A stretch of 64,000 nucleotides of DNA from Pristiophorus japonicus. Its lineage: Eukaryota. The DNA lies in contig NC_092007.1 of assembly GCF_044704955.1 (NCBI RefSeq), positions 4,960,001-5,024,000 of the forward strand, given 5' to 3'. Below are positions 5,335 through 64,000 of the stretch, one piece after another. Position numbers and translations under genes: made by a program. Numbering within the stretch: position 1 is the first letter of the stretch; every line of letters begins with the position of its first letter. The notes beneath the pieces are model-generated. The model made no database searches and was not told the origin of the DNA. It saw only the letters and a list, made by a program, of their open reading frames with translations.

Positions 5335-5502
5335 TCAGTGAAATTTAAGTGCGGCGTATTCAGTGGATTCCTCATTCTTCTGATATCTTTCATGTTTGCG
5401 AACTTTTGACACACTGACAGCTGCGTACACGACCTGATCGCTTTGAGCTGATTGGCTGGGTGGAGCCCCTCTTACACCAATATTTCTGGACTTGTCTTGT
5501 CT
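5335..5502 (-). CDS. Copy A exon 8, terminal cytoplasmic exon with ITIM and ITSM-like motif
   Basis: ttctattacag| acceptor; RQDKSRNIGVRGAPPSQSAQSDQVVYAAVSVSKVRKHERYQKNEESTEYAALKFH*. Confidence 0.88.
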   Translation of the reverse strand, partial: RQDKSRNIGVRGAPPSQSAQSDQVVYAAVSVSKVRKHERYQKNEESTEYAALKFH

Positions 5503-8500
5503 CTGTAATAGAAAGTGGCGCGTTAGATATGGAGGTACTGATCCGGTTGAGAGTGCGTTTCCTGTACCAGAATAACCCGCTTTATTCCATTTCTGCCACC
5601 ATTGTGGTGTTCCTACCTAGCGAGTGAAGTATTTCAACTGCTAATACAATACACATCTTATAGTGACAGAGTAAAGCACTACTGCCCACCGTACTTAATG
5701 GATTACATTTACAATGCATCAGGTAATTGCAGGCAATTATGATTTGTAATAGCAAATGAGTACAACGACATGGCGATCCACTCAGGTGGTGTTTGGAGAA
5801 ATGTTAACCTGGACATGTGGAGACATCTCTGTTCTTCTTCCAAAACTGAATGAGATTCCTAAGAGCCACCTGATTTGCTAGATCAGACAGCCAAGAACTT
5901 GGATAAAGATCCAGTCTGAAAGCACTAGATCCTATAATTCTGTCCTTTCTCAATACTGCACCCCAATCACTCACTAGATGAAGGTACAAAATTTTGCATT
6001 TCCACTCACAATCATCTGTTTCAGATGTGTGCCTCACAATAGCAGCGAAACGAACCCCAGTTTACGGGGGAACATTACACTGAACAAGCCCTTCGGGATA
6101 CTGACTGTATCGGAAGCAACAATGGTTTTACACCCCGCCTAATAATATTCTACATTGAAGTAAGTTCTGCTGGGGTGAAATCCGGCATTCCACACGATCC
6201 CGAGAGTTCCCTGTCCGGCCAATTAATGTTACCTCATCTCTTGGCTCAGATTGAGGCACTTAGTCTCTCCCAAAGGCCAGGCAACAATTTATGTCGCTTT
6301 CGGTTGGGAGTCGGTCGAGATCATGAAATAAGGCTTATTTATTGTAAGACTTAAAATCTCCCCACCCTACTTCCACACAGAAACATAAGAGGTATTACAT
6401 CTTGATAGGAAATAAAGGAAGGTCACTTCTTAATTGGAGGGTGCAAGTCTAGCTGGGTAGAGGAAGAAGGGGTTTTCGAAATACAAATGCTAAAACTTGT
6501 GACACAGTTTAGCAAGGCTGTATACAATATGAAAACAAGAAGTAGGGTTTCTTTCTTGAGGTATTGCATTGAATCGTAAGGCAGTTATGCTGAAATGTAA
6601 CGAACCTTGATCAGCCCAAACTTAGAGTACGATATACAATTCTGGTCGCCGAATTTTAAAAAGGATATAGACGCACTGGAGAGCGCACAGAGAAGATTCA
6701 CAAAGAGGATACCAGAAATGCGAGGTTATACATATCTGGAAAGGATCAACATAAGAACATGAGAACATAAGGAATGCGAGCTGGAATACGTCATTTGGCG
6801 GGTTGAACACATGAAGAGGCAGGGTCCCTTTCGTCTTGAAAAAAGCAGGCTGAGGGGTGACCTAATAGAGGTCTGTACAATTTTGAAAGGCTTTATAGAG
6901 TGGATAGAGAGAGAATGTTTCCACTTGTGGGAAAGACTGGAGGAGGGTCGAGTGGAGCAAAAATGCCATAATGAATCGGTAGGACCGATTGGCCTGTTTC
7001 GGCACCGTATAATTTTTTAATCCTTGTCCAGAAACCTCGCAAGGATCAAAGTTGTCCTGCGATAATGATCGGCATGCAAAATCAAAGGAGGAAAATACAG
7101 ATGATCTTTTGGGCCTTTCATTTCCCTCATATTGATATATCTCGTTGATAATTTATATCCTCGGAACTAATGTCATGGGGGACGTGAGTGTGTGCATTGT
7201 TCTGGTAACTGGGTAATGATACTGGGCCTCGATTGTGTTACGTTGTCTTCGATTTCCAAAGCCATCCCCTACAGTGACAATGTCAACATTTACCAGGACA
7301 TGACCTTTGCATTACATCCAGTTATTGGACTGAGGTGCTCATTCCACACTTGAAAATGCTCTGTGAAACACTTCAATATAGCAAGAGTTGATTCGTCAGA
7401 TTTGCATTTAATATGACTCCCAATGATTGCAAATAGAGCAAGTATCTGGCAGATAACTCAAGCGGATGCTGGGCAATTTCCATATCGTCACTTAACTCAG
7501 TGTCCAACGTGTGCTACACCAGAAACTAACTCACCGTATCGCTGTTGGTTGGGACTACACCAGTGGTATCTCTGGTCTTCTTCCTGATACAAAAAGAATA
7601 CAAATAACGCCCATGTCATAACTGCTTAAAATTGAGTTTAATAAATATTCTGGTGTTCTATATTGAACCATGAACCACACAAGTGGCTAGTGTGGCTATC
7701 ATTTACTTATTACATTGAGAGAATTATGGAACCCTACAATGGTTGCAACAAGGAAGGAGGCCATTCAGCCCGTCGAGCCCGTGCCAGATCTTTAAAAGCG
7801 AATTTCAACTAGTCCCACTCCCCCACTCTGTCCCTGTCCTGCTAGCCCTGCATGTATTTTCCTTCAGGTACTTATCCAACTTCCCTTTGAAAGCCGCAAT
7901 TGAGTCTTCCTCCACATCCCTTTCAGGTAATGCATTCCAGAATATAATCACTCGCTGTGTGAAATCTTTCCCTCATGTCGCATTTGAACCTTTTGACAAA
8001 CAACTTAAATCAGCATCCTCTGGTTCTCGACCCGCCCACCAATGGGAGCAGTTTTCCTTTATCTACTCTTGTCCAACTCCTCGTGATTTTGAACAGCTCT
8101 GTAAAATCTCCTTTCAAATTCTGTAAAGTGGGATTAGGCTAGATAGCTCCTTGTCGGCTGGCGTGGATACAATGTGGCTAAATGGACTCCTTCTGTGCTG
8201 TAAATTTCTATGAATCTATGATTATTTGTTTCTCTTCTCTAAGGAGAACAACCCAACTTCTCCAGTCCTTCCACGTAACTGAAGTCCCGCAATCCTGGAA
8301 CCATTCTTGTAAAATCTTTGCTGCACCGTCTCTAAGGCCTTCACATCCTTCGTAAAGTGCGCTGGCCAGAATTGGACACAATGCTACAGTGGAGGCCGAA
8401 CAAGTGTTTTATAAAGGTTCATCATAACTTCCTTGCTTTTGTATGCTTTGCCTCTATTTATCCGGTGATAGACCGGCACAGGGCAGATTATCCTTCCACA

Positions 8501-11500
8501 ATTCCCTAGTTGCCCCACAGAATCACTTGACCAATTTAATCCTGCCTTTCACAAATCTTATCTGAGCTTCAGAGTCAATGTTTTCACGGTTGATTTATTT
8601 GAAGCAATAGTAGCTCATAGGCAGAAATACTGATGTCACGGAACCTATCAGATCTGCAATTAACACAAGAGTTTAAGTAATTATGAACCACACATACCTC
8701 CGTACCTTCAACGCAATCAGCATCAGCAGGAGAACTGTGACGGCTGCGAGTACTGAGATAGCAATTTTCCAGGGAAATGTTCCTAAAAGTAAAAATTACA
8801 CTGCCGTTCATTATTGCTCGAATAGTACATCATCCTATTAGAATAATTTTATCAGCATGTGTAGGCAAGTTTGATAGAAATTTGCAGCTTAATTGTGAGA
8901 GTCTTACTGTTTCTCTCCTTTCCTAAAACTGTAGGACTCAGCCACACAATCAGATGATGGACTATTTGACAATGAACCCAAATCTAACCCTGCAAATTCT
9001 TATCGTCTTTTATTCATTAATGTGAAATGTTCACTGGACACAGAGCGGGCATCATCTGAACTGATTTCTCCTTCCATAAAAAAGCACAGAATTTATCCTC
9101 ATATTGATCTGTCCCTTGTGTAAATTGTAAATAAATTATTTAAGATTTATTTCCGATAGTTACGTTCCTAAGAGAAAGAAATGCATAGAAACAAACCCCT
9201 GTACACAGCTCAGCCTCGGTCAGACATGTTGAATCATGTCATGCCAATATTTGGTGTTTAATATTATGAGCGGATGAGATAGCGTGGATAGGAAGGACCT
9301 ATTTCCCTTAGCTGAATGGTCAAGAAGCAGGGGGCACAGAATTATAATAATTGGAAGAGGGTTTAGAGAGATGTTGAGAAGCATTTGTTTCATCGAGAGG
9401 GTGGTGGGGGTCTGGAACTCACTGCATGAAATGTTGGTAGAAGCAGAAACCTCACCGCATTTAAAAATACTTGGATCGGCACTTGTAACGATACCGAGAT
9501 CTGGGAATTGCGATTAGGCTGGATGGTTCTTTGTCCACCGGCACAGTCACGATCGGCCGAATAGCCTCCTACTGTGTCCCATTTTTCTATGATTGTAATT
9601 GAGATGTGCTACAAATTATTATCATCGGAAGTTAAGGAACTGGTGACTCCTCTTCATACGATGCACTTTTTGTACTACAAGGGAACCATCCACCTTGAAA
9701 CATGTCATTTAAGTTCTGACTTAACATATGTCTCCAGGTATAACCCAGAGAGTGTATCTATATCCTCACTATACACTCAGACCTGTTCGCTTGCGTTTGG
9801 AAATTTGATGTTATGCTCGAATCTGTTCTTCCAATTATCTCAGATATCGCGACTCTATTTTCACAATGAAACCACATTATTGTTTTCTCAGAGAAAATGC
9901 AGGATACCAATTTCAGTGATAGCATCAACTAATTGCAAGATCTGCACAGTGGAGTTTTATGAACAAGATATAACGGAGCATGTATTAATTGATTGAGAGA
10001 CTGCAGCTGGCTACCATTACAATGTGAGGAAGCAAGACCTCGGAAAGTTTATAATGAATTCAGAAGGTCCCGATTTTTCAAAGAACGCACCTTACCTTTA
10101 CAGTTTAATATTAACCTCTATCTTTCTTTAGAAGCACAGTGCGACAAGAAATGAATGCATACAGTCAGTGATTAAATTTAACATTATTACAACAAAAGTG
10201 AGATGGCAGTCAGTCATGAACCAGACCCTTATGCGACTGAATTTAGCAATGGATTCAGTCCTCAATCATAGATCAGTGAGAGATTATAACGTCAAATGGA
10301 ACTGGATTTTGATGACACTACCTCCACTCGCTTAGTATCTAGCCAGTGATGCAACAAACCAGCGACAGTAATGAAATGGCAGCATATCTCAACACTCACC
10401 TGTTGAATAGAACTGATATTTGCCGACACTAACGCCATGTTCGTTCCCTGCAACACAGGAGAAGTGGTGTCCTGTACCAGTTGGGTTAGTCAGTGTCAGA
10501 GAGCTCTGCACCAGGGAAGTATTCACTGCCTGTGTGGTGACTCCGAGACCTGGCATGTTTCCAGTGATGTTTCTTCCATTGACGCTCCATGTGATGTTTG
10601 CCGGGGGCTTGGCTCTTACACTGCACGTACAATGAAACCCACTCTCAGATGTGGTGCAGGTCGGGCCCCATACCATGGTGGGTTTAACTGAAAAAATAGA
10701 GTGTTCCACTTAAGATCTTTTTAATCATGCAGTTGCATTGTACAAATTGAATCAATTGGCGCTATTTGGAGAAGCATAGGAGTGAATGCAAGGCCGGCAT
10801 TAACAACAATAATAATAACTTGCATTTCAACTTGCATTCCACTCTCCAGTTCTGACGAAAGGTCATCGCTCTGAAACGTTAACTCTGCCTTCTCTGCAAA
10901 GATGCTACCTGACCTGCTGAGATTTCCAGCTTTTCTGATTTTATTCCAGATTGTAGCATCCGCAGTATTTTGCTTTATAAATTTACAATTATATAGCGCC
11001 GCTAACGTCGCAAAAACTCCCAATGAGCTTCAGAAGTTTACAGAAGACTACATCGGATGTATGGCACAAAAACGGTACATTTGGATCCAACACTCCATGC
11101 CTGAGTTAATGTTCCACTCGAGCCGCCTCCCGTCTTTCCTCACCTAAAGCTATCAGCATAACGCTCTATTCCCTTAACCTTCATACGCTTTTTCAACATC
11201 ACTTTACATGCATCTGTTCCATCAGCTTCAACCACTCGCTGTAAAGAAGTTCCTTCTGAATTCCCTATTGCATATATCTTTTTGTCTACCCTATAAAAAC
11301 CTTTCGTCATTTTAAAGATGTCAATTAGATCACTCCTCAGCCTTCTATTTTCAAGTGAAAAAAGACCCCAAAGAGCGTTAGCAAACAACATTTGATACGG
11401 ATCATTCCTGTACCGTTACAAATTTAATTGGCTCACATCACACTTACATTGTACAGAAATCTGTGTGGATCTGTTGGCGGTGCTCAGGTTATTTTCAGCC

Positions 11501-14500
11501 ACGCAATAATACTCGCCGTCATCTTCAGAACTAATGTTGTGAAATGTGTGCTTCAGTTCACCGGTGGATGATCTGCTGATCTCAGTGACAACTCGGACCA
11601 ATGTTAAATTGACGGGCTGGTCACCCAGAGCCCTGCAGTACAATAATAATGAAGTACCCTCCACTATTACGATAGAAGAATTGAAGCTTGGTTTCTCCAG
11701 TGCATCTGAAACACACGAGAGCATTGATGTTATTGGAGAATATCGGAGCAGAAGAGTAAAATCAAGTTGGCAATTGAAGAATAATATTAAAGCCGATATG
11801 GTGGCTATATTGCCAAATCTAAATTTAAAAAGCCAGCCTATGATTGTTGGCGCTATACTGCTTAAGATTATTTCAAATTTAGACCAAATTTATCTCAACG
11901 TTTTATCCTCTTCACTTCAAACGTTTGTAGTGACTGCCTGGACGTGATTCTTTTCCACAAATACATCAATCAAGCGGCCATTCCTCCAACAACAATAACA
12001 GTGGCCTTTCCCATCACTTGAACAGAGCTGTTGAGGCGGATTGCAGGCTCCCGACCACCACCGCTGATAACTCGTCACATACACTTATGTTTCAGATGCT
12101 CTCTCGGTGCAACTATATCAGGAATTAGGAGCCTTTGGAATAACATTTGACATAAGTAGCATCTATGGAGCCTTCCAATGTTACTCCCTGGGTCTTTGTC
12201 AATGTGAAATAATACAACTCACAAGAAATGTTTGATAGTCAGTTCGACCCAATGGTTATAGGAATATATCTTACACTTCGAGTACGTTCCGCTATTCAAT
12301 TAGATCATGGCTCATCCATATGGTAGCTCTGCCTACCCGCCTTTGCTTTATCCTTATTTTTAAAAACTATCCATCACATATGTTGTATATTTAATTATCT
12401 AGGCGAGCTATCACTCCACTGAGCATCAAGACAAGTTTGGATCTTGTTTATCAAAGGATGGTGCAATGCAGGGTACAGCAGATACTTACTTTGAATGTGC
12501 AGTGTGAGAGTTTCTTGAACACTCCCCACGAAACCATCAACGACAAGCTGACATCCCAGCGTTTTCCCATTGTGGTCTGGTGATGGGGTGAAGATGAATG
12601 TTGTTGAAACAGCCCATGATCCCTCCAACCTGTTGTCTCTGTATTTGGAATTTTTAGTCTCTTGCAGCAAACGAACATTATCCTCGTCCTGAATCCACGT
12701 CAGTTCTGGATTGGCGGAGGGGCAGCTGGAGGTGACTGAGCAGGTTAAATGTACGGGCTTTCCAGCAATCAATTCCCCAGGGACTGAAATCCATGACTCA
12801 TCTGTAAGCAGTGAAAGGAATTCGTGTGACTGTGGATTTCAATATAACACATGTGGAGGGAAGGGCCAGGCGGTTCAGTTCAATGTCTGAGATAATACCA
12901 TGAGCAAAAATTTATATGTTTTCCACTTGATCTCTGCTATGGGAAGGAGCCGATTGTTAATTATTACTTACAGTCACAGAATCAATCGATTGATACATGT
13001 GTTCATGAACTTAATGTCCTGCCACAATATGAATGAATTATTCATGTGAGCTTGTTTCTGATCGGTCAGTCACCGCTCTGCAGCACACAATTATTTCAAT
13101 TCAAATTGAGGTCAGAAAAAACAGTCAAAACAGAGTCCCAGATTTGGTTCCTTGAGTGTACCTGCGATATTCTTAGTCCAACGGCTCACTCTCACGTGGA
13201 ACAGTTGATTTAGCCATTGCTTATTTTTATTCTTGCTTTAAATTCATTTTCTCTCATTTAGTCTCGCGATAGGAGTGCCACAACTAACCTTCAGGACGAG
13301 GGACACGCTTAACTAACCTGGATTGTTACTGTTACCAACAGCGGGACAGTGCACAGCTATGAGAAGAAAGCAAGACCAGGTTGCGGGTTCAACACCCATT
13401 TAGGGACTTAAGCACAACCTGTAGCCTGACACTCCAGTGCAGTACTGATGCATTGTCACAATGCCGGAGATTCCATTTTACGGATGAGATATGAACCTGT
13501 TCTCCTAATTTACCTCTCAAGTGTACATAACAGTTCGCGCAGTATTATTTTGAATGGGCCTTTGTCCTCGTTAACTTTGATTGATTGACGCGTTATCTGC
13601 AAGGCTGGTGGATGTTTTAAAAGACATATACAGATGTCCTTCAGCCGTGGTGGGCCGAAGGGCCTCTTAATGTAATGTAAGATTAAATATTTCTATGATT
13701 GTATTTTATAACACACACCTGGATATTATTCAGTGTACCAGCCCTGCAGAGATGGCGTGTGACGTGGGCCAATGTCAACATGAAATCTTTCATTTTAGGC
13801 AAAAAATTGAATGGCATTGGCGAGATGGAACATTAACTACAAAAGCAAAAATTCAAAATAACTTACTTAAAATAGAAATATTGACAGGAGTTTTGGAACC
13901 GTATCCTTCTATCTGATCCTGGGAGTTCATGATCTTCAATATGAAGTAATATTCTCCTCCATCGCTCTCCCTGATGTCCTTTAACCGTAAGGAGCATTGC
14001 TTCTTTATAAAGTCGCCGGCTAACTCTGCCCTCCCTCGATAGTCATGGTGCATATTGTCTGCATCTCTGGAATCATAGATAACCGAGACCCCTGGTGCAT
14101 AAAGATGAGGACTCCCCTTTAACCACATACCCTGTGGATTGCGACCATTCGTGGGATAGTCAAATCTACACGGGATCTTTGCACATGAACCCTTCACCGC
14201 CGATAAACTCCATGGTGTCGTCACAGACCATCGTGAACTACGTACAACTGGTGAAGAAATAGAAATTAAACATCCATTGAAATCCCCAATATGAATACTT
14301 TCCCTCATCGTCAGGTTAAATACTATTACTTTAACCTTTGACGCCCACGAAAACATATTAATGAGTACCTCAATGAAAAGGCGTTAACTTTTAATTAAAA
14401 CTCCTCCAATTCCATTAACTACTCCATTGAAAGTCGGCAAATCAGAAAGTAAATATTAAATCAATATGATAAATACATAAAGAAGTTCTGAATAAAACAT

Positions 14501-14665: not shown

Positions 14666-15049
14666 GGGTGGAACGGTTCACGATGTCAAAATGACAGAAA
14701 TTGACTCAATCTCAGATATCACTAATCTAGTTCCAGATTCCGTTCGCCGGTAATATCCTGGAGTTCACAGATGACCGAATCAGAGTATCAGCAGGTCAGT
14801 TGAAAGCTATCCAACAAACATTCGACACCGTGGTTGCTCAAACAGCTATCACCACTCCTCGGATGTTGTTCATCAAAACTGCTGCAATTCTGGATCATTT
14901 CGAACGTGACCATGTCCTGTAGTAATTGGCCCGCAGTTACAGGATATGATGAGACCCCGCCTGTTGCTGATTAGCCCTGAGCAGAAATATACCAATTTCC
15001 CCTTCATCAGCACAGCTACAGGGCACGGGTGGCATTCTAGTTTGGAATA

Positions 15050-16590: not shown

Positions 16591-17304
16591 GTTCTTTATT
16601 ATGGTTCTGTGTCGTCAATGAGCTCTACGTTTGTTTTTTATTTATTTTTATTTTGTTTCTGTCTTGACTGGTGTATGGAATGTGTATTCAATTCAGGCGC
16701 CAGCTTGGTTTATCTGTCTAGATTAGGGATGTGTGTTCAGATCCAAGACTCAGGTGTTTAACAATAGCTGACTCCATATGCCTGCTCAGTCCCAGAGTGG
16801 AGGGTGATGCAATGCACTTTGCTCAATTACACTCCACACAAAGCCCAGCTTGCTTTGAGGCTCATGGGTTGGGTGTTGTGAAATCAGCATCTGGGCCTAG
16901 TAAGTGTTTACCACTGACAGTCCCTATGGTACATGCTTAGTGTCTCCCTCAGTGTCGCTGCCTCGAGGTGGGTTTATTTGCACCGTGTGTTGTGTAGCAG
17001 CAGAGCGCGCTGTGAAGCGCTGGGTCCTATTTAGCGACTATGTTGTTGTGGTTACCGCAACGCACAGCACCCTGCTATCTCTGGCGTACATGTGAGTGAA
17101 TCATTGTGTACGACGGACATGGATGAAAGATATCTGTTGTCAAGCAACATCTCTTTATACCGTGTGCTGCATCTTGAAATTTCATGTTCTGTTTGCAGCT
17201 CTGTGTTTAACCCTTCAAGCAATGTGAGATTAGGTTTGACAGTGTGCTTGAGTGATTTATATGAAACACGGGTGGAAACTACAAAGAGGATGCCGTTGCC
17301 TCAG

Positions 17305-17585
17305 ATCAGGGCAGTTGGTGCATGGGAACCCCATCCTCTTCCAGTTCCCCTGCAAGTCACAGCATAACCCTGATTTGAATATATATCACCCTCCCTGCAA
17401 CAGAGATAGGGCAAAGTCCTAAAATCCCGGAACTCCGTCCTTAACAGCGCTGTGGGAGTACCTTCACCAGACGGGCTGCAGCGGTTGCAGAGCTCGGCTC
17501 ATTACCAGCTTCTCAGGGGCGATTAGGGATGGGCAATAAATGAGACATTGCAAGCGATGCTCACATTCCAGGAGCGAATAAAAGA
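17305..17585 (+). mobile_element. LINE 3' end fragment, clade not determined (one per unit)
   Basis: Homologous to ~19040-19270; tail ggcgattagggatgggcaataaat. Confidence 0.7.
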
Positions 17586-52000: not shown

Positions 52001-55000
52001 GTCAATTAGATCACTCCTCAGCCTTCTATTTTCAAGTGAAAAAAGACCCCAAAGAGCGTTAGCAAACAACATTTGATACGGATCATTCCTGTACCGTTAC
52101 AAATTTAATTGGCTCACATCACACTGACATTGTACAGAAATCTGTGTAGATCTGTTGGCGGTGCTCAGGTTATTTTCAGCCACGCAATAATACTCGCCGT
52201 CATCTTCAGAACTAATGTTGTGAAATGTGTGCTTCAGTTCACCGGTGGATGATCTGCTGATCTCAGTGACAACTCGGACCAATGTTAAATTGACGGGCTG
52301 GTCACCCAGAGCCCTGCAGTACAATAATAATGAAGTGCCCTCCACTATTACGATAGAAGAATTGAAGCTTGGTTTCTCCAGTGCATCTGAAACACACGAG
52401 AGCATTGGTGTTATTGGAGAATATCGGAGCAGAAGAGTAAAGACAATTTGGCAATTGAAGAATAATATTAAAGCCGATATGGTGGCTACATTGCCAAATC
52501 TAAATTTAAAAAGCCAGCCTATGATTGTTGGCGCGATGCTGCTTAAGCTTATTTTAAATTTAGACCAAATTTATCTCAACGTTTTATCCTCTTCACTTCA
52601 AACGTTTGTAGTGACTGCCTGGACGTGATTCTTTTCCACAGAAACATCAATCAAGCGGCCATTCCTCCAACAACAAGAACAGTGGCCTTTCCCATCACTT
52701 GAACAGAGCTGTTGAGGCGGATTGCAGGCTCCCGACCACCACCGCTGATAACTCGTCACATACACGTATGTTTCAGATGCTCTCTCGGTGCAACTATATC
52801 AGGAATTAGGAGCCTTTGGAATAACATTTGACATAAGTAGCATCTATGGAGCCTTCCAATGTTACTCCCTGGGTCTTTGTCAATGTGAAATAATACAACT
52901 CACAAGAAATGTTTGATAGTCAGTTCGACCCAATAGTTATAGGAATATATCTTACACTTCGAGTACGTTCCGCTATTCAATTAGATCATGGCTCATCCAT
53001 ATGGTAGCTCTGCCTACCCGCCTGTGCTTTATCCTTATTTTTAAAAACTATCCATCACATATGTTGTATATTTAATTATCTAGGCGAGCTATCACTCCAC
53101 TGAGCATCAAGACAAGTTTGGATCCTGTTTATCAAAGGATGGTGCAATGCAGGGTACAGCAGATACTTACTTTGAATGTGCAGTGTGAGAGTTTCTTGAA
53201 AACTCCCCACAACACCATCAACGACAAGCTGACATCCCAGCGTTTTCCCATTGTGGTCTGGTGTTGGGTTGAAGATGAATATTGTTGAAACAGCCCATGA
53301 TCCCTCCAACCTGTTGTCTCTGTATTTGGAATTTTTAGTCTCTTGCAGCAAACGAACATTATCCTCGTCCTGAATCCACGTCAGTTCTGGATTGGCGGAG
53401 GGGCAGCTGGAGGTGACTGAGCAGGTTAAATGTACGGGCTTTCCAGCAATCAATTCCCCAGGGACTGAAATCCATGACTCATCTGTAAGCAGTGAAAGGA
53501 ATTCGTGTGACTGTCGATTTCAATATAACACATGTGGAGGGAAGGGCCAGGCGGTTCAGTTCAATGTCTGAGATAATACCATGAGCAAAAATGTATATGT
53601 TTTCCACTTGATCTCTGCTGTGGGAAGGAGCCGATTGTTAATTATTACTTACGGTCACAGAATCAATCGATTGATACATGTGTTCATGAACTTAATGTCC
53701 TGCCACAATATGAATGACTTATTCATGTGGGCTTGTTTCTGATCGGTCAGTCACCGCTCTGCAGCACACAATTATTTCAATTCAAATTGAGGTCAGAAAA
53801 AACATTCAAAACAGAGTCCCAAATTTGGTTCCTTGAGTGTACCTGGGATATTCTTAGTCCAACGGCTCACTCTCACGTGGAACAGTTGATTTAGCCATTG
53901 CTTATTTTTATTCTTGCTTTTAATTCATTTTCTCTCATTTAGTCTCGCGATAGGAGTGCCACAACTAACCTTCAGGACGAGGGACACGCTTAACTAACCT
54001 GGTTTGTTACTGTTACCAACAGCGGGACAGTGCACAACTATGAGAAGAAAGCAAGACCAGGTTGCGGGTTCAAGACTCATTTCAGAGACTTAAGCACAAC
54101 CTGTAGCCTGACACTCCAGTGCAGTACTGATGCATTGTCACAATGCCGAAGATTCCATTTTACGGATGAGATATTAACCTGTTCTCCTAATTTACCTCTC
54201 AAGTGTACATAACAGTTCGCGCAGTATTATTTTGAATGAGCCTTTGTCCTCGTTAACTTTGATTGATCGACGCGTTATCTGCAAGGCTGGTGGATGTTTT
54301 AAAAGACAAATACAGATGTCCTTCAGCCGTGGTGGGCCGAAGGGCCTCTTAATGTAATGTAAGATTAAATATTTCTATGATTGTATTCTATAACACACAC
54401 CTGGATATTATTCAGTGTACCAGCCCTGCAGAGATGGCGTGTGACGTGGGCCAATGTCAACATGAAATCTTTCATTTTAGGCAAAAATTGAATGGCATTG
54501 GCGAGATGGAACATTAACTACAAAAGGAAAAATTCAAAATAACTTACTTAAAATAGAAAGATTGACAGGAGTTTTGGAACCGTATCCTTCTATCTGATCC
54601 TGGGAGTTCATGATCTTCAATATGAAGTAATATTCTCCTCCATCGCTCTCCCTGATGTCCTTTAACCGTAAGGAGCATTGCTTCTTTATAAAGTCGCCGG
54701 CTAACTCTGCCCTCCCTCGATAGTCATGGTGCATATTGTCTGCATCTCTGGAATCATAGATAACCGAGACCCCTGGTGCATAAAGATGAGGACTCCCCTT
54801 TAACCACATACCCTGTGGATTGCGACCATTCGTGAGATAGTCAAATCTACACGGGATCTTTGCACATGAACCCTTCACCGCCGATAAACTCCATGGTGTC
54901 GTCACAGACCATCGTGAACTACGTACAACTGGTGAAGAAATAGAAATTAAACATCCATTGAAATCCCCAATATGAATACTTTCCCTCATCGACAGGTTAA

Positions 55001-55346
55001 ATACTATTCCGTTAACCTTTGACGCCCACGAAAACATATTAATTAGTACCTCAATGAAAAGGCGTTAAATTTTAATTAAAACTCCTCCAATTCCATTAAC
55101 TACTCCATTGAAAGCCGGCAAATCAGAAAGTAAATATTAAATCAATATGATAAATACATAAAGAAGTTCTGAATAAAACATATTAAAGGTGCAATTCACA
55201 AATTACTAGTTAAGCATGTACTATCTCTATAAAGTAAGAACGTTTTAATTGAACACAAAATGGAAATCGTTTCGAACATCAATTAGTAAACTGAACATTT
55301 TACCTTTACAGAATATCAGAATGGAGATAAATGTTAAACTCTTCAT
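49069..55346 (-). CDS. Copy D: Siglec-like activating-type receptor, apparently intact
   Basis: Exons: 55304-55346, 54548-54928, 53171-53482 (AG intact), 52129-52386, 51081-51368, 49371-49470 (TM Arg); probable stop exon 49069-49078. Confidence 0.8.
49371..49470 (-). CDS. Copy D transmembrane exon with Arg
   Basis: Same splice sites as copy B. Confidence 0.85.
51081..51368 (-). CDS. Copy D membrane-proximal Ig exon
   Basis: GT-AG intact, 288 nt. Confidence 0.9.
52129..52386 (-). CDS. Copy D Ig domain 3 exon
   Basis: Open frame; donor GTCAGT. Confidence 0.85.
53171..53482 (-). CDS. Copy D Ig domain 2 exon
   Basis: GT-AG intact. Confidence 0.9.
54548..54928 (-). CDS. Copy D V-set exon
   Basis: GT-AG intact; P->L in CRFDYLT. 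Confidence 0.9.
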
Positions 55347-58300
55347 GGGTGGAGCGGTTCACGATGTCAAAATGACAGAAATTGACTCAATCTCAGATAT
55401 CACTAATCTAGTTCCAGATTCCGTTCGCCGGTAATATCCTGGAGTTTACAGTTGACCGAATCAGAGTATCAGCAGGTCAGTTGAAAGCTATCCAACAAAC
55501 ATTCGACACCGTGGTTGCTCAAACAGCTATCACCACTCCTCGGATGTTGCTCATCAAAACTGCTGCAATTCTGGATCATTTCGAATGTGACCGTGTCCTG
55601 TAGTAATTGGCCCGCAGTTACAGGATATGCTGAGACCCCGCCTGTTGCTGATTAGCCCTGAGCAGAAATATACCAATTTCCCCTTCATCAGCACAGCTAC
55701 AGGGCACGGGGTGGCATTCTAGTTTGGAATACAGAATAAATGTTCGGACACTGAAATATGTAGAGGAACAAAGTGTCCTTGGAGTGCAAGTCCACCGATC
55801 CCTGAAGGTAGCAGGACAGGCAGATAAGCTGCTTAAGAAGGCATACGGAATACTAGCATTTATTAGTCAAGGTGCAGAATACAAGAACAAAGAGGTTATT
55901 CTTGAACTGTATAAAACACTAATTGGACCACTGCTAGAGTACTGTGTGCAGTTCTGGTCTTCACTTTACAGGAAAGATGTGATGCACCAGAGAGGGTATG
56001 TTGCCTTTAATGGAGAATCTTATATTTGAGGAACGGGACTATAGGCTGGGGTAGTATTCTTTGAAATAGATGAGTCTGAAGGAAGATTAAATTGAGCAGT
56101 ATTACATTATGAGAGGCCTGGATAGAGTGGATAAGAAGGACCTACTTCCTTTAGCAGAGGGGTCAATAACGATGGGGCATAGATTAAAAGTAATTGGTAG
56201 GAGGTGTAGTGGGCATTTGAGGAGAATTATTTTCAGCCAGAGGGTGATGGGGGAAAGGAATCACTGCCTCAAAGCATGGTAGAGACAGAAACCCTCAGCA
56301 TCTAAAAATTACGTGGATGTGCACTTGAAGTGCTGTAACCTACAGGGATATGGAGCGAGAGCTGGAAATGGGATTAGGCTGGCATCGCTGAAATTAACGG
56401 ACTTATATCCAGGTTGCTGCAATGAAACTTTTCTGATGATTCTGATTACAGTGCTGGAACTGTGAGTTGTGATTCAGCTTTTAGATTCGAGGGTCTATGT
56501 AGCTGGAAGCAATGTGGAAATTTGTCTACAGGAATATATCCCTTCACATTCTATGTTACAAGAAGGACATAGATGAACTGGAGAAGGTGCGAATCAGATT
56601 TTCAAAAAGTAGACCAGAAATGGGAGAATATAAACAGCAGGAAAGTCTGAACGGTCTGGCAAGCTTTCCTCTAGAAAAGAGAAGGTGGAGGGATGACATA
56701 ATAGAGGCCTTTAAAATGATGAAGGGGTTTGATAGGATAGATGAAGCGGAGATTTTCCACTTGTGCGGGGATCAAAACCAGAGTTCATCGATATGAGATA
56801 GTCATTCAGAAATAACAGAAGGAATTCAGGAGAACCTTATTTACCCAGAGAATGGTGAGAATGTGGAAGTTGCTACCACACGGAGGGATTGAGGCGAATA
56901 GTATAGATGTGTTTAAGAGGCAGCTAGATAGCTACATGAGGGAGAAAGGAATATGCTGCTGGATGAAATAAACTTGGGAGGAGAAAGCTCCGGTGGAGCA
57001 TAAACGTTGCCTTGGACAAGTTGGGCCCAATTGCATGTTTCTTTGCTGCACATTTGATGTAATTAACCCTGAATTAATTGCATCAAGTTTGCTGAGTCTC
57101 TCACTATATTCAAGGATGCGATAGATAGATATTTGTAGTTTAGAGAATGAAGGCTATGTGGAGAGGGCGGGAATTTGCTAAGGTCGATGATCAGCTATGA
57201 CCTCATTGAATGGCGGAGCAGGCTTGAGGGGCCATGTTGGCTACTCCTGCTACTATTTCTTATGCACTTTTGTTCTTTATTATGGTTCTGTGTCGACAAT
57301 GAGCTCTACGTTTGTTTTTTATTTATTTTTATTTTGTTTCTGTCTTGACTGGTGTATGGAATGTGTATTCAACTCAGGCGCCAGCTTGGTTTATCTGTCT
57401 AGATTAGGGATGTGTGTTCAGATCCAGGACTCAGGTGTTTAACAATACCTGACTCCATATGCCTGCTCTGTCCCAGAGTGGAGGGTGATGCAATGTACTT
57501 TGCTCAATTACACTCCACACAAGGCCCAGCTTGCTTTGAGGCTCACGGGTTGGGTGTTGTGTAATCAGCATCTGGGCCTAGTAAGTGTTTACCACTGACT
57601 GTCCCTATGGTACATGCTTAGTGTCTCCCTCAGTGTCGCTGCCTCGAGGTGGGTTTATTTGCACCGTGTGTTGTGTAGCACCAGAGCGCGCTGTGAAGCG
57701 CTGGGTCCTATTTAGCGACTGTGTTGTTCTGGTTACCGCAACGCACAGCACCCTGCTATCTCTGGCGTACATGTAAGTGAATCATTGTGTACGACGGAGA
57801 TGGATGAAAGATATCTGTTGTCAAGCAACATCTCTTTATACCGTGTGCTGCATCTTGAAATTTCATGTTCTGTTTGCAGCTCTGTTTTTAACCCTTCAAG
57901 CAATGTGAGATCAGCTTTGACAGTGTGCTTGAGTGATTTATATGAAACACGGGTGGAAGCTACAAAGAGGATGCCGTTACCTCAGATCAGGGCAGTTGGT
58001 GCATGGGAACCCCATCCTCTTCCAGTTCCCCTGCAAGTCACAGCATAACCCTGATTTGAATATATATCACCCTCCCTGCAACAGAGATAGGGCAAAGTCC
58101 TAAAATCCCGGAACTCCGTCCTTAACAGCGCTGTGGGAGTACCTTCACCAGACGGGCTGCAGCGGTTGCAGAGCTCGGCTCATTACCAGCTTCTCAGGGG
58201 CGATTAGGGATGGGCAATAAATGAGACATTGCAAGCGATGCTCACATTCCAGGAGCGAATAAAAGATATGCAGCTGCATTTTTCCACGGTCCTCTCCCAC

Positions 58301-61300
58301 CTCCAATATTCAAATTATGCCCCTGTTCTGAAATGTATCTTTATTAGTAAAATGAGTTCCCGCCAGTACCTCAAACAACTAACCATTTTTAACTTGCAAG
58401 TCACGCAAATAATATCTCCAGGATTTTCGATAGGAGCGGAATTTTTATGATCCTGGCACTGGTTGGCTGGGATGGGGATTTATAATTGCTGATTGGCCCT
58501 TGGATTTTAAGAAAATCGACAATGCAATTGTGTATTGCAGTGTGTTGCCATTTCCTCGACTGCTCCTGCAGCCTGAGCTGATGTCGATTCCTTGGGCTCA
58601 GTGCGAAAGTGAAAGGCTTCTCCATGCAACAGCACCACACAGTGGCAGCCTGACGGCATTACAAGAGCTATTTTTCACTGCACCATCAGACACATCTTGG
58701 CTCAGCTGTGGCTAACATCCTCTATCATGCCAAGATTAACTCCTAGTTCACCTCACCTTACCCAACACGTTGCCGAAATGTACTTCAGCATCTACAGAAT
58801 GAAATAGGGGAATGTGTTATTCCTGATACAATGGACTTTCCACTTTTGTCCAACACATCGCACACTTGGATCTGTTCTCTCTCCACACATGCTCTCAATA
58901 GTAGCAACAGCTCTCACTCCTATTTGGATCAGTTTACAGACCAGGCACATGAGTCTTCAGTTGTACAAGCGAAATGCTTCCGGAACAAGTTGTAAACCTT
59001 GCGAAATTCCTCTTGTTAAGGTATACTGCTCTTACTGACAAACACGGTCTGGGCCTATTAGGTTGAATTGTTGTAAAGGGTGGAGTTCTGGCAAGGTGAA
59101 TTGTTACCATATTTCATGCACATTATTGTGTTTGATGCTTGGAACACAGTTATATCATGGAAATCACCGTGATTTTCTTTGCTGAATTGGGACATTGAGA
59201 CTATTTACTTTTCACAGTATCAAGTTCCCAGCATCGGTTTTTGGTCCTTGCACAATGAACTCACATGGTTGAGCAGATGTCCCACTGGGAATATCCTAAA
59301 GATGCACCATACCAATCGTTGTGGAAATAGCACGGCCCACTAAGTTCTTTGTTTTTAACTCGTGCTGTGCAATTCAATGGAACTAGTCGCAGTCCCACTA
59401 CTCTATCCTCACAGCGCTGTACATTATTCCCGTTTAAAATATATATCCAATATGGGTTTGAAAGTTACTATTGATTTTGATACTCCCAGATTTTCAGGCA
59501 GTGAATTCCATGTCATAACAATTCTCTGTCGATTCCCTGCAAATGTTTTCCAAATTTACTTTCCGGTGCCTTTCAGTTTAATGCAGAGCACACCAGTTAC
59601 CCACCTTCAACACTCACTCCCTCCACCACCGTGGTGCACCGTCTACAAGATGCACTGCAGCAACTCGCCAAGGCTTCTTCGGCAGCACCTCCCAAACCCG
59701 CCACTTCAAACACCTAGAAGGACAAGGGCAGCAGGCGCATGGGAACACGACCACCTCCACATTCCCCTCCCAGTCACACACCGTCCAGACTTGGAAATAT
59801 ATCGCCCGTTCTTTCATCGTCGCTGGGTCAAAATCCTGGAAAGTCCTCCACAACAGCGCTGTGATAGCACCTTCACCACACGGACTGCATCGGTTCAAGA
59901 AGGCAGCTCACCACCAATTTCTCAAGAGCAATAAGCAACGGGCAATATATTATGTCGTGCCACTGATAAAGAGTCAAACATAACTAATTACCCATTATTA
60001 TAAAATATCTCAGAAAATTATTTAATTGTTAAGCTTCTCTTGGGCTCAAATCGGGACCCTAATAAACCAGGTTGCATGTATGTTCCTGGGTTTTATTGAC
60101 AGGCTGAACATAATGGGAAGATTCAATTCTATTGGCATCATAACATCCTGGGAAAGCTTCACAATTTCAGTGGAAATAGTGAAGGAGGAAATTGTTGCCG
60201 AAAAGTATTTCCAATATAACAAAGTAGCTGGTATTACTCAGAAATATCCACGCTGTCCCAACCACATTTGCTGCATTGAGTAACAGGAGCATAGTTCCAC
60301 GATTCACTGCACTGTGTCTGACCGGGAGAAGGTGGAGGTTTATTTTGGATGTAAGTATAGCGTTCCACTCTCAGCACCTCTGTGCTCCAGTAACAAATAT
60401 CAAAATAAATTAGTTGTGATGTGTTTTAATGAAGCATTGCATAAACTAAAATATGACAAATTACAAGTTACATAACAGAATTATGCAATCATAGAAAGGT
60501 TACAGCACAGAAGACTATTTGACCCGTCGAACCCATGCCGACTCTCAGCTCGATCCACTCCTGCTCCCTTTTCCCGTGGTCCTGCATTTTTTCCCTTCAG
60601 ATATAATCTACCTCAGTTTTGAAAGATAAGATTGATTCTGCTGGCACCGCCCTTCCAGGCAATGAATTCCAGATCCCAACCACGCGCCGCATAAAAAGCA
60701 TTTATCTTACATCGCAATTTGCTTCTTTTGCCAATCACCTTAAATCTGTGTTTCTGGTTCTCGACCCTTCTGCCAATGGGAATAGTTTATCTCAATCTAC
60801 TCTGTACAGTCCCATCATGATTTTGAACTCCTCTATCAAATCTGCTCTCAATACTATCAGTTCCAAAGATAACAACCCCCCAGGTTCTCCAGTCTCTCCT
60901 CGTAACTGAAGTCCCACATTCTCGGAATCTTTCTCGTAAATCTTTACTGCACCTTCTCTGAAGCAGATGTATCTGTACCCAGTTGGGGCCGAACCAGTGT
61001 TTTATACAGGTTAATCATAACTTCCGCACTTTTGTACTCCCTACCACTATTTATGAGGCCAACTGGCCTTACCTAATTTAATTTGCAATTTTCTGCACAG
61101 ATTGATAATGAGCGGAATCTAATACAGACAGCAATACTTCAGAAACCACGCAGATGCATTGTTTCTTAAACACATGTTCCTAAATAGTACACGGCTTTTA
61201 AATTACCCTTTTGAAAACACAATAGTTTGTACAATATCTGTGTATTGTAAAGGTAACTGATTAGAATTGACACTGAGCTGTGAAGATTTATTATACTGTG

Positions 61301-62229
61301 TTGACTAATGCTGCCAAATGAATCCAATTAACTATGGAGAAGTTCCTCATTGACCGCCAGAGTTGTCTAAGACGTTAACAGAGGGACGTGTGTAATGCAA
61401 ACAATCTTAACATTACTGGGGAAGATTGCTACTTTATTAAAGCACATCAACACTGTTTAAAAGTGACTGGAACCATTCAAGCCAACGGCATTTCAGGCAT
61501 CTGTTTGGAGTGAAAACAAGTGTGGGATTGTAAATTTCACAAAGGCAAGGATGTTATGCCAACCCTTTATAAAATATCGGATTGGCCTCAACTGGAGAAT
61601 TCAGTCCAATTCTGGGCATCGCACATTAGGAAGGACGTGAAGGCCTGAGAGAGGGTGCAGAAAATATAGACGAGAATAGTCCCAATGACGAGGGACTTCA
61701 GTTACGTGGAGAGACTGGAGAAGCTGGGGTTGTTCTCCTTAGAGCAGAGACGTTGGAGAGGAGATTTGACAGTGGTGTTCAGAATCAAAAGTAGATAGAG
61801 AGAAATTGTTCCCATTGGAGGAAGGGTCAAGAACCAGAGGACACAGATTTAAGATGATTGCCAGAAGAACCAATGGCGATATGAGGAAAAAATATTACGC
61901 AGCGAGTGGTTAGGAGCTGGAATGCACTGCCTGGACGGGTGGTGGATGCAGATTCAATCGTGGCTTTCAAAAGAGAATTGGATATGTACCTGAAGGAGAA
62001 TAAATGCAAGGCTACAGGTAAAGGGCGGGGCAGTGGGATTGGCTGAAATGCTCTTGCAGAGATCCGGCACGGACTAGAAGGGGGCCAATGACCTCCTTTT
62101 TTGCTGTAACGATTTTAGAATTTTATTTTGTTTAAAAAAAACACAGTAAACAGAACTGAAAATATTAGCGATTAATCTGCGAAATATGCTCATTTTCACA
62201 GAAATTGCAGGCATATGAACTTTAAAATC

Positions 62230-62392
62230 ATTTAAATTTGCAGCATATTAACTGTAATCTTCATTCTTGAGACACCTTTCATATTTGTGAAAGTTTCAAA
62301 CTTCCAGCGATTGCCGCCGGAACCTCGACACTTTGCGCTGATTGGAAAGATGCTGTCCATCTGCGAGCAATGTTTCTCTCCTGGTCTTGGCT
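62230..62392 (-). pseudogene. Decayed ITIM-exon relic, copy E
   Basis: Homologous to 21550-21712. Confidence 0.78.
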
Positions 62393-62940
62393 CTGTAACA
62401 GAAAGCAGTGCGTTAGAAAAGGGTGTGAGGCCACTTTCTGTCCCAGAATAACCCTCTTTCTCGCTGCTCAGATCATTTTCAATCTTTCCCTACTCAATGA
62501 TGGAAACATTCTGAGCGTTGCAACATGCAGCACCTATGAAAGACGAACACGAAAATAACAGATGCCCCATCGAGCCTATCCCAAACAGTCAGGACGCAAC
62601 AATGCCTCAGGATTGCAACTCTCCCTCTCGGCACCATGTCAGCTCTGACTGGTGGGAAATAACGTAATAAAAAAGTACTGGGTCAATTCAGCAATAAATA
62701 CATCTGCAAATGTCTTCTCCTACCTCTATGACGAACAAAACGAGTTTCAATTGATAACAATGTCGATGAGGTACATCACCTAACAGAGCAACTAAGATTT
62801 GCCCGCAATGATATTAGCCCCAGGAGCGGATTCTACCCGTTCCAGTCCAGCAATTCTTGCTCATATGCTGAAATTCTGACGACACGTTATTTTGAAATCT
62901 CTCTTTATTACCCCACGAGTTGAAGTAATTATTCCCATAC

Positions 62941-63040
62941 CCGTGTGAGTCTATTTCTTTCATCACCAAGACAATGATGGCAATCAGAATGAGAACGGCA
63001 GCAGCGGTTCTGATTGACATGGCGATTTTCCAAAATGATC
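62941..63040 (-). CDS. Copy E transmembrane exon with Arg (ectodomain exons lie beyond the window end)
   Basis: GSFWKIAMSIRTAAAVLILIAIIVLVMKEIDSHG, same splice sites; probable stop exon 62639-62648. Confidence 0.8.
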
Positions 63041-64000
63041 CTGAAAATATTCAACAACAAAAAACACGCTCTTCATTATTGCTCTGATTAACCCAGGTTT
63101 CTCGATAGCATTTAACAACATGTATGGGACTATTAAGATAGAAATCAACTCACATTTATTTAGTGCTTTTCCAAACCTCGCAACCCACTTTACAGCCAAT
63201 GAAGTACTATGGAAGTTTATTCACTGTTGCACTGTAGGTAACGTGGCAGCTGTATTGCGCATAGCATGCTCCCACAAACAGCGATGAGATAAATAAGCAG
63301 ATAATCTCTTTCAGTATTACTGGTTGAGGGATAAATAATTGCCAAGGCATCGGAGAGCGCTGCGCCTGCTCGTCTTCAATCGATTCAGTATTACAGCATC
63401 CCTTAGAAAATGCAGCTATCCACATCGCATACTCCAATCTGCTCCTCCGTTATCCGATATCTTATTTCAGTCCATAAGTTGCGTTTAAAGTTATTCTGCG
63501 CCAATTGTCAGTATTTTGACACGTGATAGTTTGCTCAGAATATCAATAAAACTGACATTCGGCTGAAAAAACTGCGTGAAAATAAATTGAACTGAGCAAT
63601 TGTAAATTGAATGATGGACTGTGCCCCACTAATGTTACAGTGAGCGCAAATATGGTTTCATAGAGTGTGTCACTAATTCAGAAAGTTCTGTTTTATAAAC
63701 GATGACACATTCCTTCTAGTGTTTTATATTACACTTTCTATCTTCGTTAAAAAAGGCGACAATAATCAAATTCAGAAGACCAGAATATAAACTTGACGGG
63801 GATTATTCTCATCTGAATTTCGCGAGCAGCATGAACCAGAGCCAAACACTACTAAAATTAAGAATGGTATACGTCCTAAATTGCAAATAATCAGAGAAAA
63901 ATACAACATTACTGCATAGGAGGAGGACATTCGGCCCATCATGTTCCTGCCGGCCAATTTAGCATTATCCAGCCTAATTCCATTTTCAAGCTCATCGTCA

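What the first reader, a model, noticed from the sequence alone, without database searches (positions are those of the whole stretch)
5335..64000. Paired inhibitory/activating Siglec-like receptor cluster: one ITIM gene plus at least four TM-Arg genes, with a near-identical ectodomain
Seen: five paralogous minus-strand genes. Copy A has a neutral TM and an ITIM/ITSM-like tail. Copies B-E have an Arg in the TM and no intact inhibitory motif. The SP, V, D2 and D3 exons of B-D are almost identical to those of A (V differs by about 2 aa, D3 by none). Established: this is the architecture of paired immune receptors such as SIGLEC5/SIGLEC14, SIGLEC11/SIGLEC16 and LILRB/LILRA, where activating partners are thought to counter pathogens that exploit the inhibitory receptor. 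Inference: an independently evolved, copy-number-expanded paired receptor system in a probable cartilaginous fish. I am not aware of a description of it but cannot search. The ORF track misses the copy A TM and tail exons, so automated annotation could overlook the pairing.
Basis: partly seen in the sequence, partly recalled or inferred. Interest (0 to 1): 0.92.

Follow-up and report, generated by a model that had tools for sequence, protein, structure and literature searches.

The report
Shark paired Siglec-like receptor gene array
A tandem array of immune-receptor genes in a cartilaginous fish has one copy built to inhibit and several built to activate, all with almost the same outer part; this is the decoy-style pairing known from human Siglecs, but expression is unproven and several activating copies have damaged splice sites.

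Summary
From 9964 to the window's end runs a tandem array of about 13.55-kb units, 97-100% identical. Each unit carries minus-strand SP, V and three C2 exons. Copy A continues into unique DNA with a neutral TM exon, a 49-nt exon and a last exon carrying VVYAAV and TEYAAL (1584 nt, 527 aa, all consensus splice sites). Copies B-E use a diverged paralogous TM exon with an Arg, followed by a decayed copy of the tail exon (Tyr lost, early stop). Between A and the others, identity steps from about 77% near D4 to over 99% from 11361 upward, as repeated gene conversion would give.

The nearest relatives are unpublished automatic gene models from many sharks and rays. They include ITIM forms and TM-Arg forms, apparently neighbouring genes in Mustelus. 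V domains group by species, not by signalling type.

Caveats:
- Every copy has Ile where Siglecs have the sialic-acid-binding Arg.
- B and C have lost the D2 acceptor (AG to AC). C and D have a weakened D3 donor. C also lacks four D4 residues.
- No RNA run was listed, so no exon chain is confirmed.

Verdict: a real, new member of a known kind; function is inferred.

The parts
9964..64000 (-). Tandem array of about 13.55-kb units: U1 9964-23543, U2 23544-37114, U3 37115-50662, U4 50663-64000 (cut by the window's end)
   Evidence: Self-BLAST offsets of 13580, 27139 and 40687 at 97.2-98.4% identity; repeat families spaced 13548-13580; windowed identity
14623..14665 (-). Copy A signal-peptide exon (MKSLTFISILIFCK + G, donor gtaaaa); identical in B (28202-28244), C (41750-41792) and D (55304-55346)
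   Evidence: it matches the Heptranchias P0162 N-terminus MKSIKFILILIISKVVHSSRWSV
13867..14247 (-). Copy A V-set exon (Siglec-type, three Cys, Ile at the essential-Arg position); B 27446-27826, C 40994-41374, D 54548-54928
   Evidence: Pfam V-set 5e-10 and Ig_CD22 2.7e-07; PDB MAG 1.5e-14 and sialoadhesin 4e-14, with Ile aligned to Arg of YNFRFEI; column tally
12490..12801 (-). Copy A D2 (C2-set) exon with acceptor cag; B 26069-26380 and C 39617-39928 have cac (AG lost); D 53171-53482 has cag
   Evidence: PDB MAG residues 126-203, 1.5e-11
11448..11705 (-). Copy A D3 (Ig/I-set) exon with donor gtaagt; B 25027-25284 gtaagt; C 38575-38832 and D 52129-52386 gtcagt
   Evidence: protein identical in all four copies; PDB MAG domain 4, 1.1e-13
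10400..10687 (-). Copy A D4 (Ig) exon; B 23980-24267, C 37539-37814 (12-nt in-frame deletion removing ITWS), D 51081-51368. A differs from B-D at about 8% of bases
8698..8782 (-). Copy A TM exon, uncharged core, acceptor tag, donor gtatgt, leaves in phase 2
   Evidence: it matches the TFPW...KV(R/Q/H) TM of inhibitory relatives
7535..7583 (-). Copy A 49-nt cytoplasmic exon (KKTRDTTGVVPTNSDT), acceptor cag, donor gtgagt. It is the shortened remnant of the relatives' exon that carries the proximal SVTYAAV motif
   Evidence: tblastn of relatives' tails; sequence view; frame test
7496..7534 (-). Decayed remainder of that exon, with two in-frame stops where relatives have SVTYAAV
5335..5502 (-). 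Copy A last coding exon: RQDKSRNIGVRGAPPSQSAQSDQVVYAAVSVSKVRKHERYQKNEESTEYAALKFH*, with an ITIM and a distal ITIM/ITSM-like motif
   Evidence: homologous to relatives' ...VLYAAV...SEYAAIKWK
22262..22361 (-). Copy B TM exon with Arg (SFWKIAMSIRNAVAVLILIAIIVLVMKEMDLH); C 35823-35922, D 49371-49470, E 62941-63040
   Evidence: same offset from D4 as in copy A, about 72% identical to A including intron flanks; motif shared with Mustelus P0058 and Cetorhinus P0031
21590..21712 (-). Fossil tail exon of copy B (ITIM Tyr replaced, VEFPAP; early stop; ITSM remnant out of frame); C 35151-35273, D 48699-48821, E 62270-62392
   Evidence: 68% BLAST match to 5350-5536
11161..11360 (.). Last identity step between copy A and B-D (96-97% here, 99% or more above), marking the end of the most recent conversion tract in the D3-D4 intron
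   Evidence: 100-bp windows and positions of differences private to U1

Best explanation
This is a cluster of an elasmobranch family of MAG-like Siglec-type receptors, organised as an inhibitory/activating pair.

Copy A encodes SP, V and three C2 domains, an uncharged TM and a tail with an ITIM (VVYAAV) and a distal ITIM/ITSM-like motif (TEYAAL). Once phosphorylated, such a tail would recruit SH2 phosphatases (inferred).

Copies B-E encode nearly the same ectodomain joined to a paralogous TM helix with an Arg in its outer third, and a short tail without tyrosine motifs. That is the signature of receptors that signal through an ITAM adaptor such as FcR-gamma or DAP12 (inferred).

The two gene types are old paralogues: DNA from D4 to the tail is about 68-80% identical. 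Repeated gene conversion or unequal crossing-over has kept everything from the promoter to the D3-D4 intron 98-100% identical. The same process amplified the activating unit in tandem.

In this lineage the canonical sialic-acid-binding Arg became Ile (ATA; one base from AGA) and spread to all copies. The present ligand is therefore probably not bound in the classical Siglec way.

Several activating copies carry splice lesions. These would either drop an Ig domain in frame or inactivate the copy.
For: Array and exon sets.

Copy A: all eight exons have consensus splice sites and give one open frame of 1584 nt.

Age of the two types: the TM exons of A and B sit at the same distance from D4 and align at about 72%, introns included. 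The B-E tail exon is a decayed homologue of A's.

Stepwise identity: 74-82%, then 84-90%, then 96-97%, then 99% or more.

Siglec-type ectodomain.

Relatives: they have the same inhibitory tail (RKKTRD..SVTYAAV..VLYAAV..SEYAAI) and the same TM-Arg type (FW without Pro, IR in the same column, M-x-x-SH extension) in Mustelus and Cetorhinus. The two Mustelus forms have consecutive accessions on one contig.

V-domain tree: inhibitory and TM-Arg forms pair by species (Mustelus 100/98, window 98/100).

The closest relative, Heptranchias P0162, still has Arg (YYFRLNI).

The known parallel is described in PMC6288428.
Against: - No expression evidence: no RNA run was listed, and no protein from this genome was found in the protein collections.
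- B and C lack the D2 acceptor AG. C and D have a gtcagt D3 donor after a non-G last exon base. C lacks ITWS in D4.
- Differences among copies in V, D2 and D4 are almost all nonsynonymous (for example 9 N to 0 S for A-B in V plus D2). This fits relaxed constraint as well as it fits diversifying selection.
- The 3' end of the B-E message is undetermined; three models give three different short tails.
- TM peptides are too short to prove orthology with the Mustelus and Cetorhinus Arg types. B is 50% identical to A's TM but 38-45% to theirs.
- Adaptor pairing rests on analogy.
Confidence: 0.62

Rival explanations
1. The cluster is real, but in this genome the TM-Arg copies are decaying duplicates produced by recent copy-number expansion. 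Only copy A is a working (inhibitory) receptor, so there is no functional pairing in this species or individual.
For: Every complete TM-Arg copy has at least one lesion: B has D2 acceptor AC; C has acceptor AC, donor gtcagt and a 12-nt deletion removing the conserved Trp region; D has donor gtcagt. Copy A has none. The N:S ratio among copies is near or above neutral. The tail exon is already a fossil. Human SIGLEC14 and SIGLEC16 null alleles are common (PMC6288428).
Against: All Ig exons are phase 1-1, so skipping D2 or D3 stays in frame. Natural relatives lacking D3 (Cetorhinus P0031) or D2 (Heterodontus P0050) exist. An in-frame CAG lies 18 nt inside D2. No copy has a stop or frameshift in any Ig or TM exon.
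Confidence: 0.22
2. The TM-Arg receptors are made but are not ITAM-coupled activators. They could be decoys without signalling, partners of another membrane protein, or sources of soluble forms.
For: No adaptor was tested. The tail is undefined. A Heptranchias isoform skips the TM exon (P0162).
Against: An Arg in the outer third of an otherwise hydrophobic helix, combined with loss of the tyrosine motifs, recurs in three shark lineages in this subfamily. It also occurs in another shark Siglec-like protein, P0019 of Scyliorhinus torazame. In other vertebrate receptor families this combination marks adaptor coupling (established knowledge; PMC6288428).
Confidence: 0.1
3. Part of the array is an assembly artefact (an over-expanded repeat), so the copy number, and perhaps the junction of copy A with the array, is not real.
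For: U2 and U3 are 100% identical over about 12 kb. No reads could be laid on the window.
Against: U2 and U3 differ in their D4 regions (98-99%, 12-nt indel). U1 and U4 differ from them by 1-3% throughout. The A/B-type transition is a graded series of steps, not a sharp mis-join. The window has no N.
Confidence: 0.06

Closest known systems
Primate SIGLEC5/SIGLEC14 and SIGLEC11/SIGLEC16 paired receptors
   Same: - Adjacent genes with near-identical 5' ectodomain exons kept alike by repeated gene conversion.
- One partner has an ITIM plus a distal ITIM-like motif; the other has a basic TM residue and a short tail.
- The activating partner is often defective.
- The essential Arg is lost in some lineages (PMC6288428; PMC4042635).
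   Different: - A different branch of the family: V and D2 are closest to MAG and sialoadhesin, not to CD33-related Siglecs.
- The activating unit is amplified in tandem (at least four in the window).
- Arg is absent from both partners.
- The fossil ITIM exon is still recognisable behind each activating copy.
- The pair appears shared by several shark orders rather than being recent.
Automatic NCBI gene models in other elasmobranchs, e.g. Mustelus asterias XP_078093182 (ITIM form, named Siglec-14) and XP_078093181 (TM-Arg form, named MAG-like); Heptranchias perlo Siglec-5-like and MAG-like; Cetorhinus maximus Siglec-13-like
   Same: - The same domain order, the same TFPW-type TM and ITIM/ITSM tail, or the same FW...IR TM.
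- 62% identity to Heptranchias P0162 over SP plus V.
   Different: - In relatives the middle cytoplasmic exon keeps a third motif (SVTYAAV); copy A has lost it.
- Several relatives, including the closest, keep the essential Arg.
- Their genomic loci could not be read here.
Myelin-associated glycoprotein (MAG, Siglec-4)
   Same: It is the best solved-structure match for V and D2. D3 and D4 match MAG domains 4 and 5. The cysteine pattern is the same.
   Different: Four Ig domains instead of five, no Arg118 equivalent, an ITIM/ITSM tail, a multigene array and paired TM types. It is not a MAG orthologue.
LILRB/LILRA, PIR-B/PIR-A and FcalphaRI-type receptors (comparison from memory, not tested)
   Same: An Arg a few residues into the TM helix (xIRxAVA...), as in FcR-gamma-coupled receptors; paired with ITIM-bearing relatives in one cluster.
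   Different: An unrelated Ig-domain lineage. The resemblance is a lead for which adaptor to test first, not evidence.

Membership tests
Siglec family | N-terminal V-set domain most similar to Siglec V domains | tested here: met
   PDB: MAG 1.5e-14, sialoadhesin 4e-14, Siglec-8/7/10/5 and CD33 from 1e-8 to 1e-6. Pfam Ig_CD22 31.4 bits against a cut-off of 27.
Siglec family | Siglec cysteine pattern: three Cys in V (intra-sheet pair plus one for a bond to domain 2) and an extra Cys in D2 | tested here: met
   V has GSCAKIPC...KKQCSL, and all three columns are Cys in the window and in reference Siglecs. D2 has LTCSVTSSCP...LGC. The disulfide bonds themselves are inferred.
Siglec family | Essential Arg on strand F that binds the sialic-acid carboxylate | tested here: not met
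   Ile (YYFILKI) is aligned to Arg of sialoadhesin YNFRFEI and of MAG YYFRGDL and the other reference Siglecs. The same holds in A, B, C and D.
Siglec family | C2-set Ig domains after the V domain, with a type I membrane topology | tested here: met
   Pfam C2-set_2, Ig_2 and ig on D2-D4; TM exons.
Siglec family | Binds sialylated glycans | not testable with these tools
   Needs glycan arrays with the ectodomain. Loss of the Arg predicts no classical binding.
CD33-related Siglecs | Tail with an ITIM and a membrane-distal ITIM-like/ITSM motif | tested here: met
   VVYAAV and TEYAAL in copy A's last exon, in frame under the 8-exon model.
CD33-related Siglecs | Groups with CD33-related Siglecs rather than with MAG, sialoadhesin or CD22 | tested here: not met
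   CD33-related structures score far below MAG and sialoadhesin. In the V tree the window sits inside an elasmobranch-only group. The deep split has weak support (62/64), and no mammalian CD33-related sequence was in the tree.
MAG (Siglec-4) orthologue | Single-copy gene with V plus four C2 domains, Arg118, and a tail without ITIM/ITSM | tested here: not met
   Four Ig exons, Ile at the Arg position, an ITIM/ITSM tail and a multicopy array.
Paired activating/inhibitory immune receptors | Neighbouring genes with near-identical ectodomains | tested here: met
   V 124/126, D2 96-98/103, D3 85/85, D4 79-81/95; same array.
Paired activating/inhibitory immune receptors | One partner with ITIM; the other with a basic TM residue and no ITIM | tested here: met
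   This is met at sequence level only; the exon joins are inferred from splice sites, frame and homology.
Paired activating/inhibitory immune receptors | Concerted evolution of the ligand-binding part against old signalling parts | tested here: met
   Identity steps from 74-82% to 99% or more. The V tree pairs the two forms by species. Derived TM-Arg features are shared across species.
Paired activating/inhibitory immune receptors | Both partners expressed; activating partner bound to an ITAM adaptor; inhibitory partner recruits SHP-1/2 | not testable with these tools
   No RNA run was listed. No adaptor sequence from this genome was at hand.

The most novel reading that the evidence does not exclude
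An inhibitory/activating Siglec-type pair arose before the shark orders diverged and has been held together by concerted evolution ever since. Members repeatedly lost the canonical sialic-acid Arg: 16 of the 26 elasmobranch V domains aligned here lack both Arg and Lys at that column, counting three of the window's own copies. If so, the decoy-style pairing is an ancestral property of jawed-vertebrate Siglec-like receptors. It would not be tied to sialic-acid recognition, pointing instead to a protein or non-classical glycan ligand.
Probability: 0.3. Interest if true: 0.7.

Novelty: new member of a known kind. Interest (0 to 1): 0.55.

Why it matters
Paired Siglecs have so far been discussed as a primate and mammalian speciality of the CD33-related branch. 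This locus shows the same architecture in a cartilaginous fish, in a MAG-like branch of the family, with the conversion history still readable in the DNA: graded identity steps and a fossil ITIM exon behind each activating copy.

Relatives in other sharks suggest the pair is old. That would move the origin of Siglec-type inhibitory/activating pairing towards the base of jawed vertebrates. It would also give a natural series of Arg-containing and Arg-less members for asking what these receptors bind.

The practical value is modest. It corrects misleading automatic names (MAG-like, Siglec-13, Siglec-14) and gives exact exon models to test.

Tried and rejected
Tools that gave nothing or were closed:
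- RNA evidence: the look-up of sequencing runs listed no run.
The Mustelus and Heptranchias loci could therefore not be read, and adjacency in Mustelus rests on consecutive accessions on one contig.
- No protein of this genome turned up in three large protein searches.
- Pfam found nothing in six plus-strand ORFs of the spacers.
- Paper searches for shark or cartilaginous-fish Siglecs and paired receptors found no description.

Models rejected for copy A:
- TM donor 8698 joined directly to CAG|5502 gives a stop after 10 codons.
- The full ancestral middle exon gives a stop (TVS*).
- The 49-nt exon joined to the second AG (5500) shifts the frame.
- Two further models reach the same ITIM frame and cannot be excluded without cDNA: donor 8706 to 5502, and donor 8698 to 5500.

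Positive selection: NG86 counts are nearly all nonsynonymous in V, D2 and D4, but there are too few for a test. No claim is made.

Searches were made exon by exon, by reference. Junction frames were read only in local scripts.
Full report
**What is in the window**

The window has no N. A self-comparison shows one long tandem array. Positions 9964-50430 match 23544-64000 at 98.4%, with further diagonals at offsets 27139 and 40687. Repeat families are spaced 13548-13580. I call the units U1 (9964-23543), U2 (23544-37114), U3 (37115-50662) and U4 (50663 to the window's end).

U2 and U3 are 100% identical over about 12 kb but differ at 1-2% of positions, plus a 12-nt indel, in their D4 regions. 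U4 differs from them by 1-3% throughout.

**Exons**

Each unit carries, on the minus strand, five exons with consensus sites, all in phase 1:
- a signal-peptide exon
- a 381-nt V-set exon
- three Ig exons of 312, 258 and 288 nt

Pfam calls V-set and Ig_CD22 on the first Ig exon and C2-set or Ig families on the others.

Against solved structures:
- V and D2 match myelin-associated glycoprotein best (1.5e-14 and 1.5e-11).
- Sialoadhesin scores 4e-14 on V; CD33-related Siglecs lie at 1e-8 to 1e-6.
- D3 matches MAG domain 4, and D4 weakly matches MAG domain 5.

The three-cysteine pattern of Siglec V domains is kept.

**Copy A's 3' end**

Below 9964 the DNA is unique to copy A.
- The TM exon 8698-8782 encodes an uncharged helix.
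- The last exon 5335-5502 ends ...VVYAAV...TEYAALKFH*.
- Joined directly, these two exons run into a stop.

Tails of shark relatives, laid on the window, revealed a third cytoplasmic exon. In relatives it reads RKKT.D....SVTYAAV.... In copy A the second half carries two stops. A gtgagt donor just before them makes a 49-nt exon, 7535-7583, with a strong cag acceptor.

With this exon the frame runs through to the ITIM and the distal motif. Two other joins reach the same frame and cannot be excluded without cDNA.

**Copies B-E**

At the same distance from D4 as in copy A lies a paralogous TM exon: 22262-22361 and its three repeats. It aligns to A's at about 72%, intron flanks included.

It encodes SFWKIAMSIR(N/T)A.AVLILIAIIVLVMKE..., with Arg where A has Leu.

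About 550 nt further on is a 68% identical copy of A's last exon. There the ITIM tyrosine is replaced (VEFPAP or VEVPAA), a stop comes early, and the distal motif survives only out of frame. Whichever 3' end is used, the tail is short and has no tyrosine motif.

**History**

Identity between U1 and U2-U4, in 100-bp windows (500-bp windows):

| Positions | Identity | Feature |
|---|---|---|
| 9964-10363 | 74-82% (69% in one U1-U4 window) | |
| about 10364-10760 | 82-96% | D4 exon |
| 10763-11160 | 84-90% | |
| 11161-11360 | 96-97% | |
| 11361 upward | mostly 99-100% for about 1.4 kb, then 97-99% | A's promoter region and gene B's 3' end |

A single crossover would give one sharp step. Several nested steps fit repeated conversion or unequal exchange with different end points. 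The A type and the B type are therefore old whole-gene paralogues whose 5' halves are kept alike, and the B-type unit was then amplified.

**Relatives**

I searched the V exon alone against 1.84 billion representatives. I then searched with two full-length relatives found that way. Both routes gave only elasmobranch proteins as close hits. All were automatic NCBI models with assorted names: MAG-like, Siglec-5, -12, -13 and -14. The closest is Heptranchias perlo P0162, at 62% over SP plus V. Its N-terminus confirms the SP-V join.

Most relatives have the TFPW-type TM and a tail with three tyrosine motifs.

Mustelus asterias P0058 and Cetorhinus maximus P0031 instead share three features with B-E:
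- FW without Pro
- Ile-Arg in the same column
- an M-x-x-SH extension after the helix

The Mustelus ITIM and TM-Arg models have consecutive accessions on one contig.

In a V-domain tree the two forms pair by species: Mustelus 100/98, the window's copies 98/100. This is what concerted evolution of an old pair predicts. The short TM peptides cannot exclude convergence.

**The missing arginine**

In every copy the strand-F position that holds the essential Arg in all reference Siglecs is Ile. The codon is ATA, one change from AGA.

The closest relative still has Arg. Across the elasmobranch V domains aligned, 8 have Arg and 2 have Lys. The remaining 16 have another residue, counting three of the window's own copies. 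Classical sialic-acid binding is therefore unlikely here, which weakens the pathogen-mimicry story as the present driver.

**State of the activating copies**

No Ig or TM exon has a stop or a frameshift. However:
- B and C have cac instead of cag at the D2 acceptor.
- C and D have gtcagt instead of gtaagt at the D3 donor, after a T.
- C lacks the four residues ITWS in D4.

Because all Ig exons are phase 1-1, skipping stays in frame. Relatives without D2 or D3 exist. An in-frame CAG also lies 18 nt inside D2. Copy A has no lesion.

Differences among copies are nearly all nonsynonymous in V, D2 and D4, and none is nonsynonymous in D3. The counts are too small to tell selection from drift.

**Limits**

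- No RNA run was listed.
Searches were exon by exon, by reference. Junction frames were read only in local scripts.
- Adaptor coupling and phosphatase recruitment are inferences from well-known receptor families (PMC6288428).

**Verdict**

The reading as an inhibitory/activating Siglec-type pair shaped by concerted evolution is the best explanation (about 0.6). The main rival is that the activating copies in this genome are decaying.

The kind of system is known, and the family is already in databases under automatic names. No paper describing it was found. They agree with what I measured.

Noticed in passing
window 10290-10320 and 23870-23905 (also in U3 and U4): About 100 nt downstream of each D4 exon lies a short relic resembling the end of a D4 exon (SVSKYQFHL in B, SVIKIQFHL in A). 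It is probably the remnant of a second D4-like exon; Heterodontus P0006 and Chiloscyllium P0004 have two D4-like domains.
   Followed up: partly
window 25041-37114 versus 38600-50662: About 12 kb of U2 and U3 are 100% identical, while their D4 regions differ. This is either a very recent duplication or conversion, or an assembly effect.
   Followed up: partly
window 14946-15347, 28525-28926, 42073-42474, 55724-56029 (+), and 1246-1491, 4272-4583 (+): Plus-strand ORFs with motifs such as LEYCVQFWS recur in each unit and, diverged, below copy A. They look like fragments of interspersed repeats (my impression: LINE reverse-transcriptase tails), but Pfam gave no hit.
   Followed up: partly
window 18682-19254 (+) and its repeats at 32259, 45807 and 59362: A 190-aa proline-rich plus-strand ORF is conserved in every unit. 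It has no Pfam family, and its conservation is explained by the recent duplication.
   Followed up: partly
P0162 (Heptranchias perlo isoform X2), seen against window 7495-7593 and 5340-5633: This relative's isoform skips the TM exon and reads the cytoplasmic exons in another frame. It could be a soluble form of the receptor.
   Followed up: no
P0019 (Scyliorhinus torazame, named Siglec-12), P0021, P0022: Other fish Siglec-like proteins among the V-domain hits also have Ile-Arg near the start of the TM helix and no ITIM, so TM-Arg forms are not confined to this subfamily.
   Followed up: partly
window 22227-22235: An AATAAA hexamer lies about 30 nt past the TM-Arg exon donor in copy B and is absent at the aligned place in copy A. 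Its meaning is unclear, since cleavage there would leave no stop codon.
   Followed up: no
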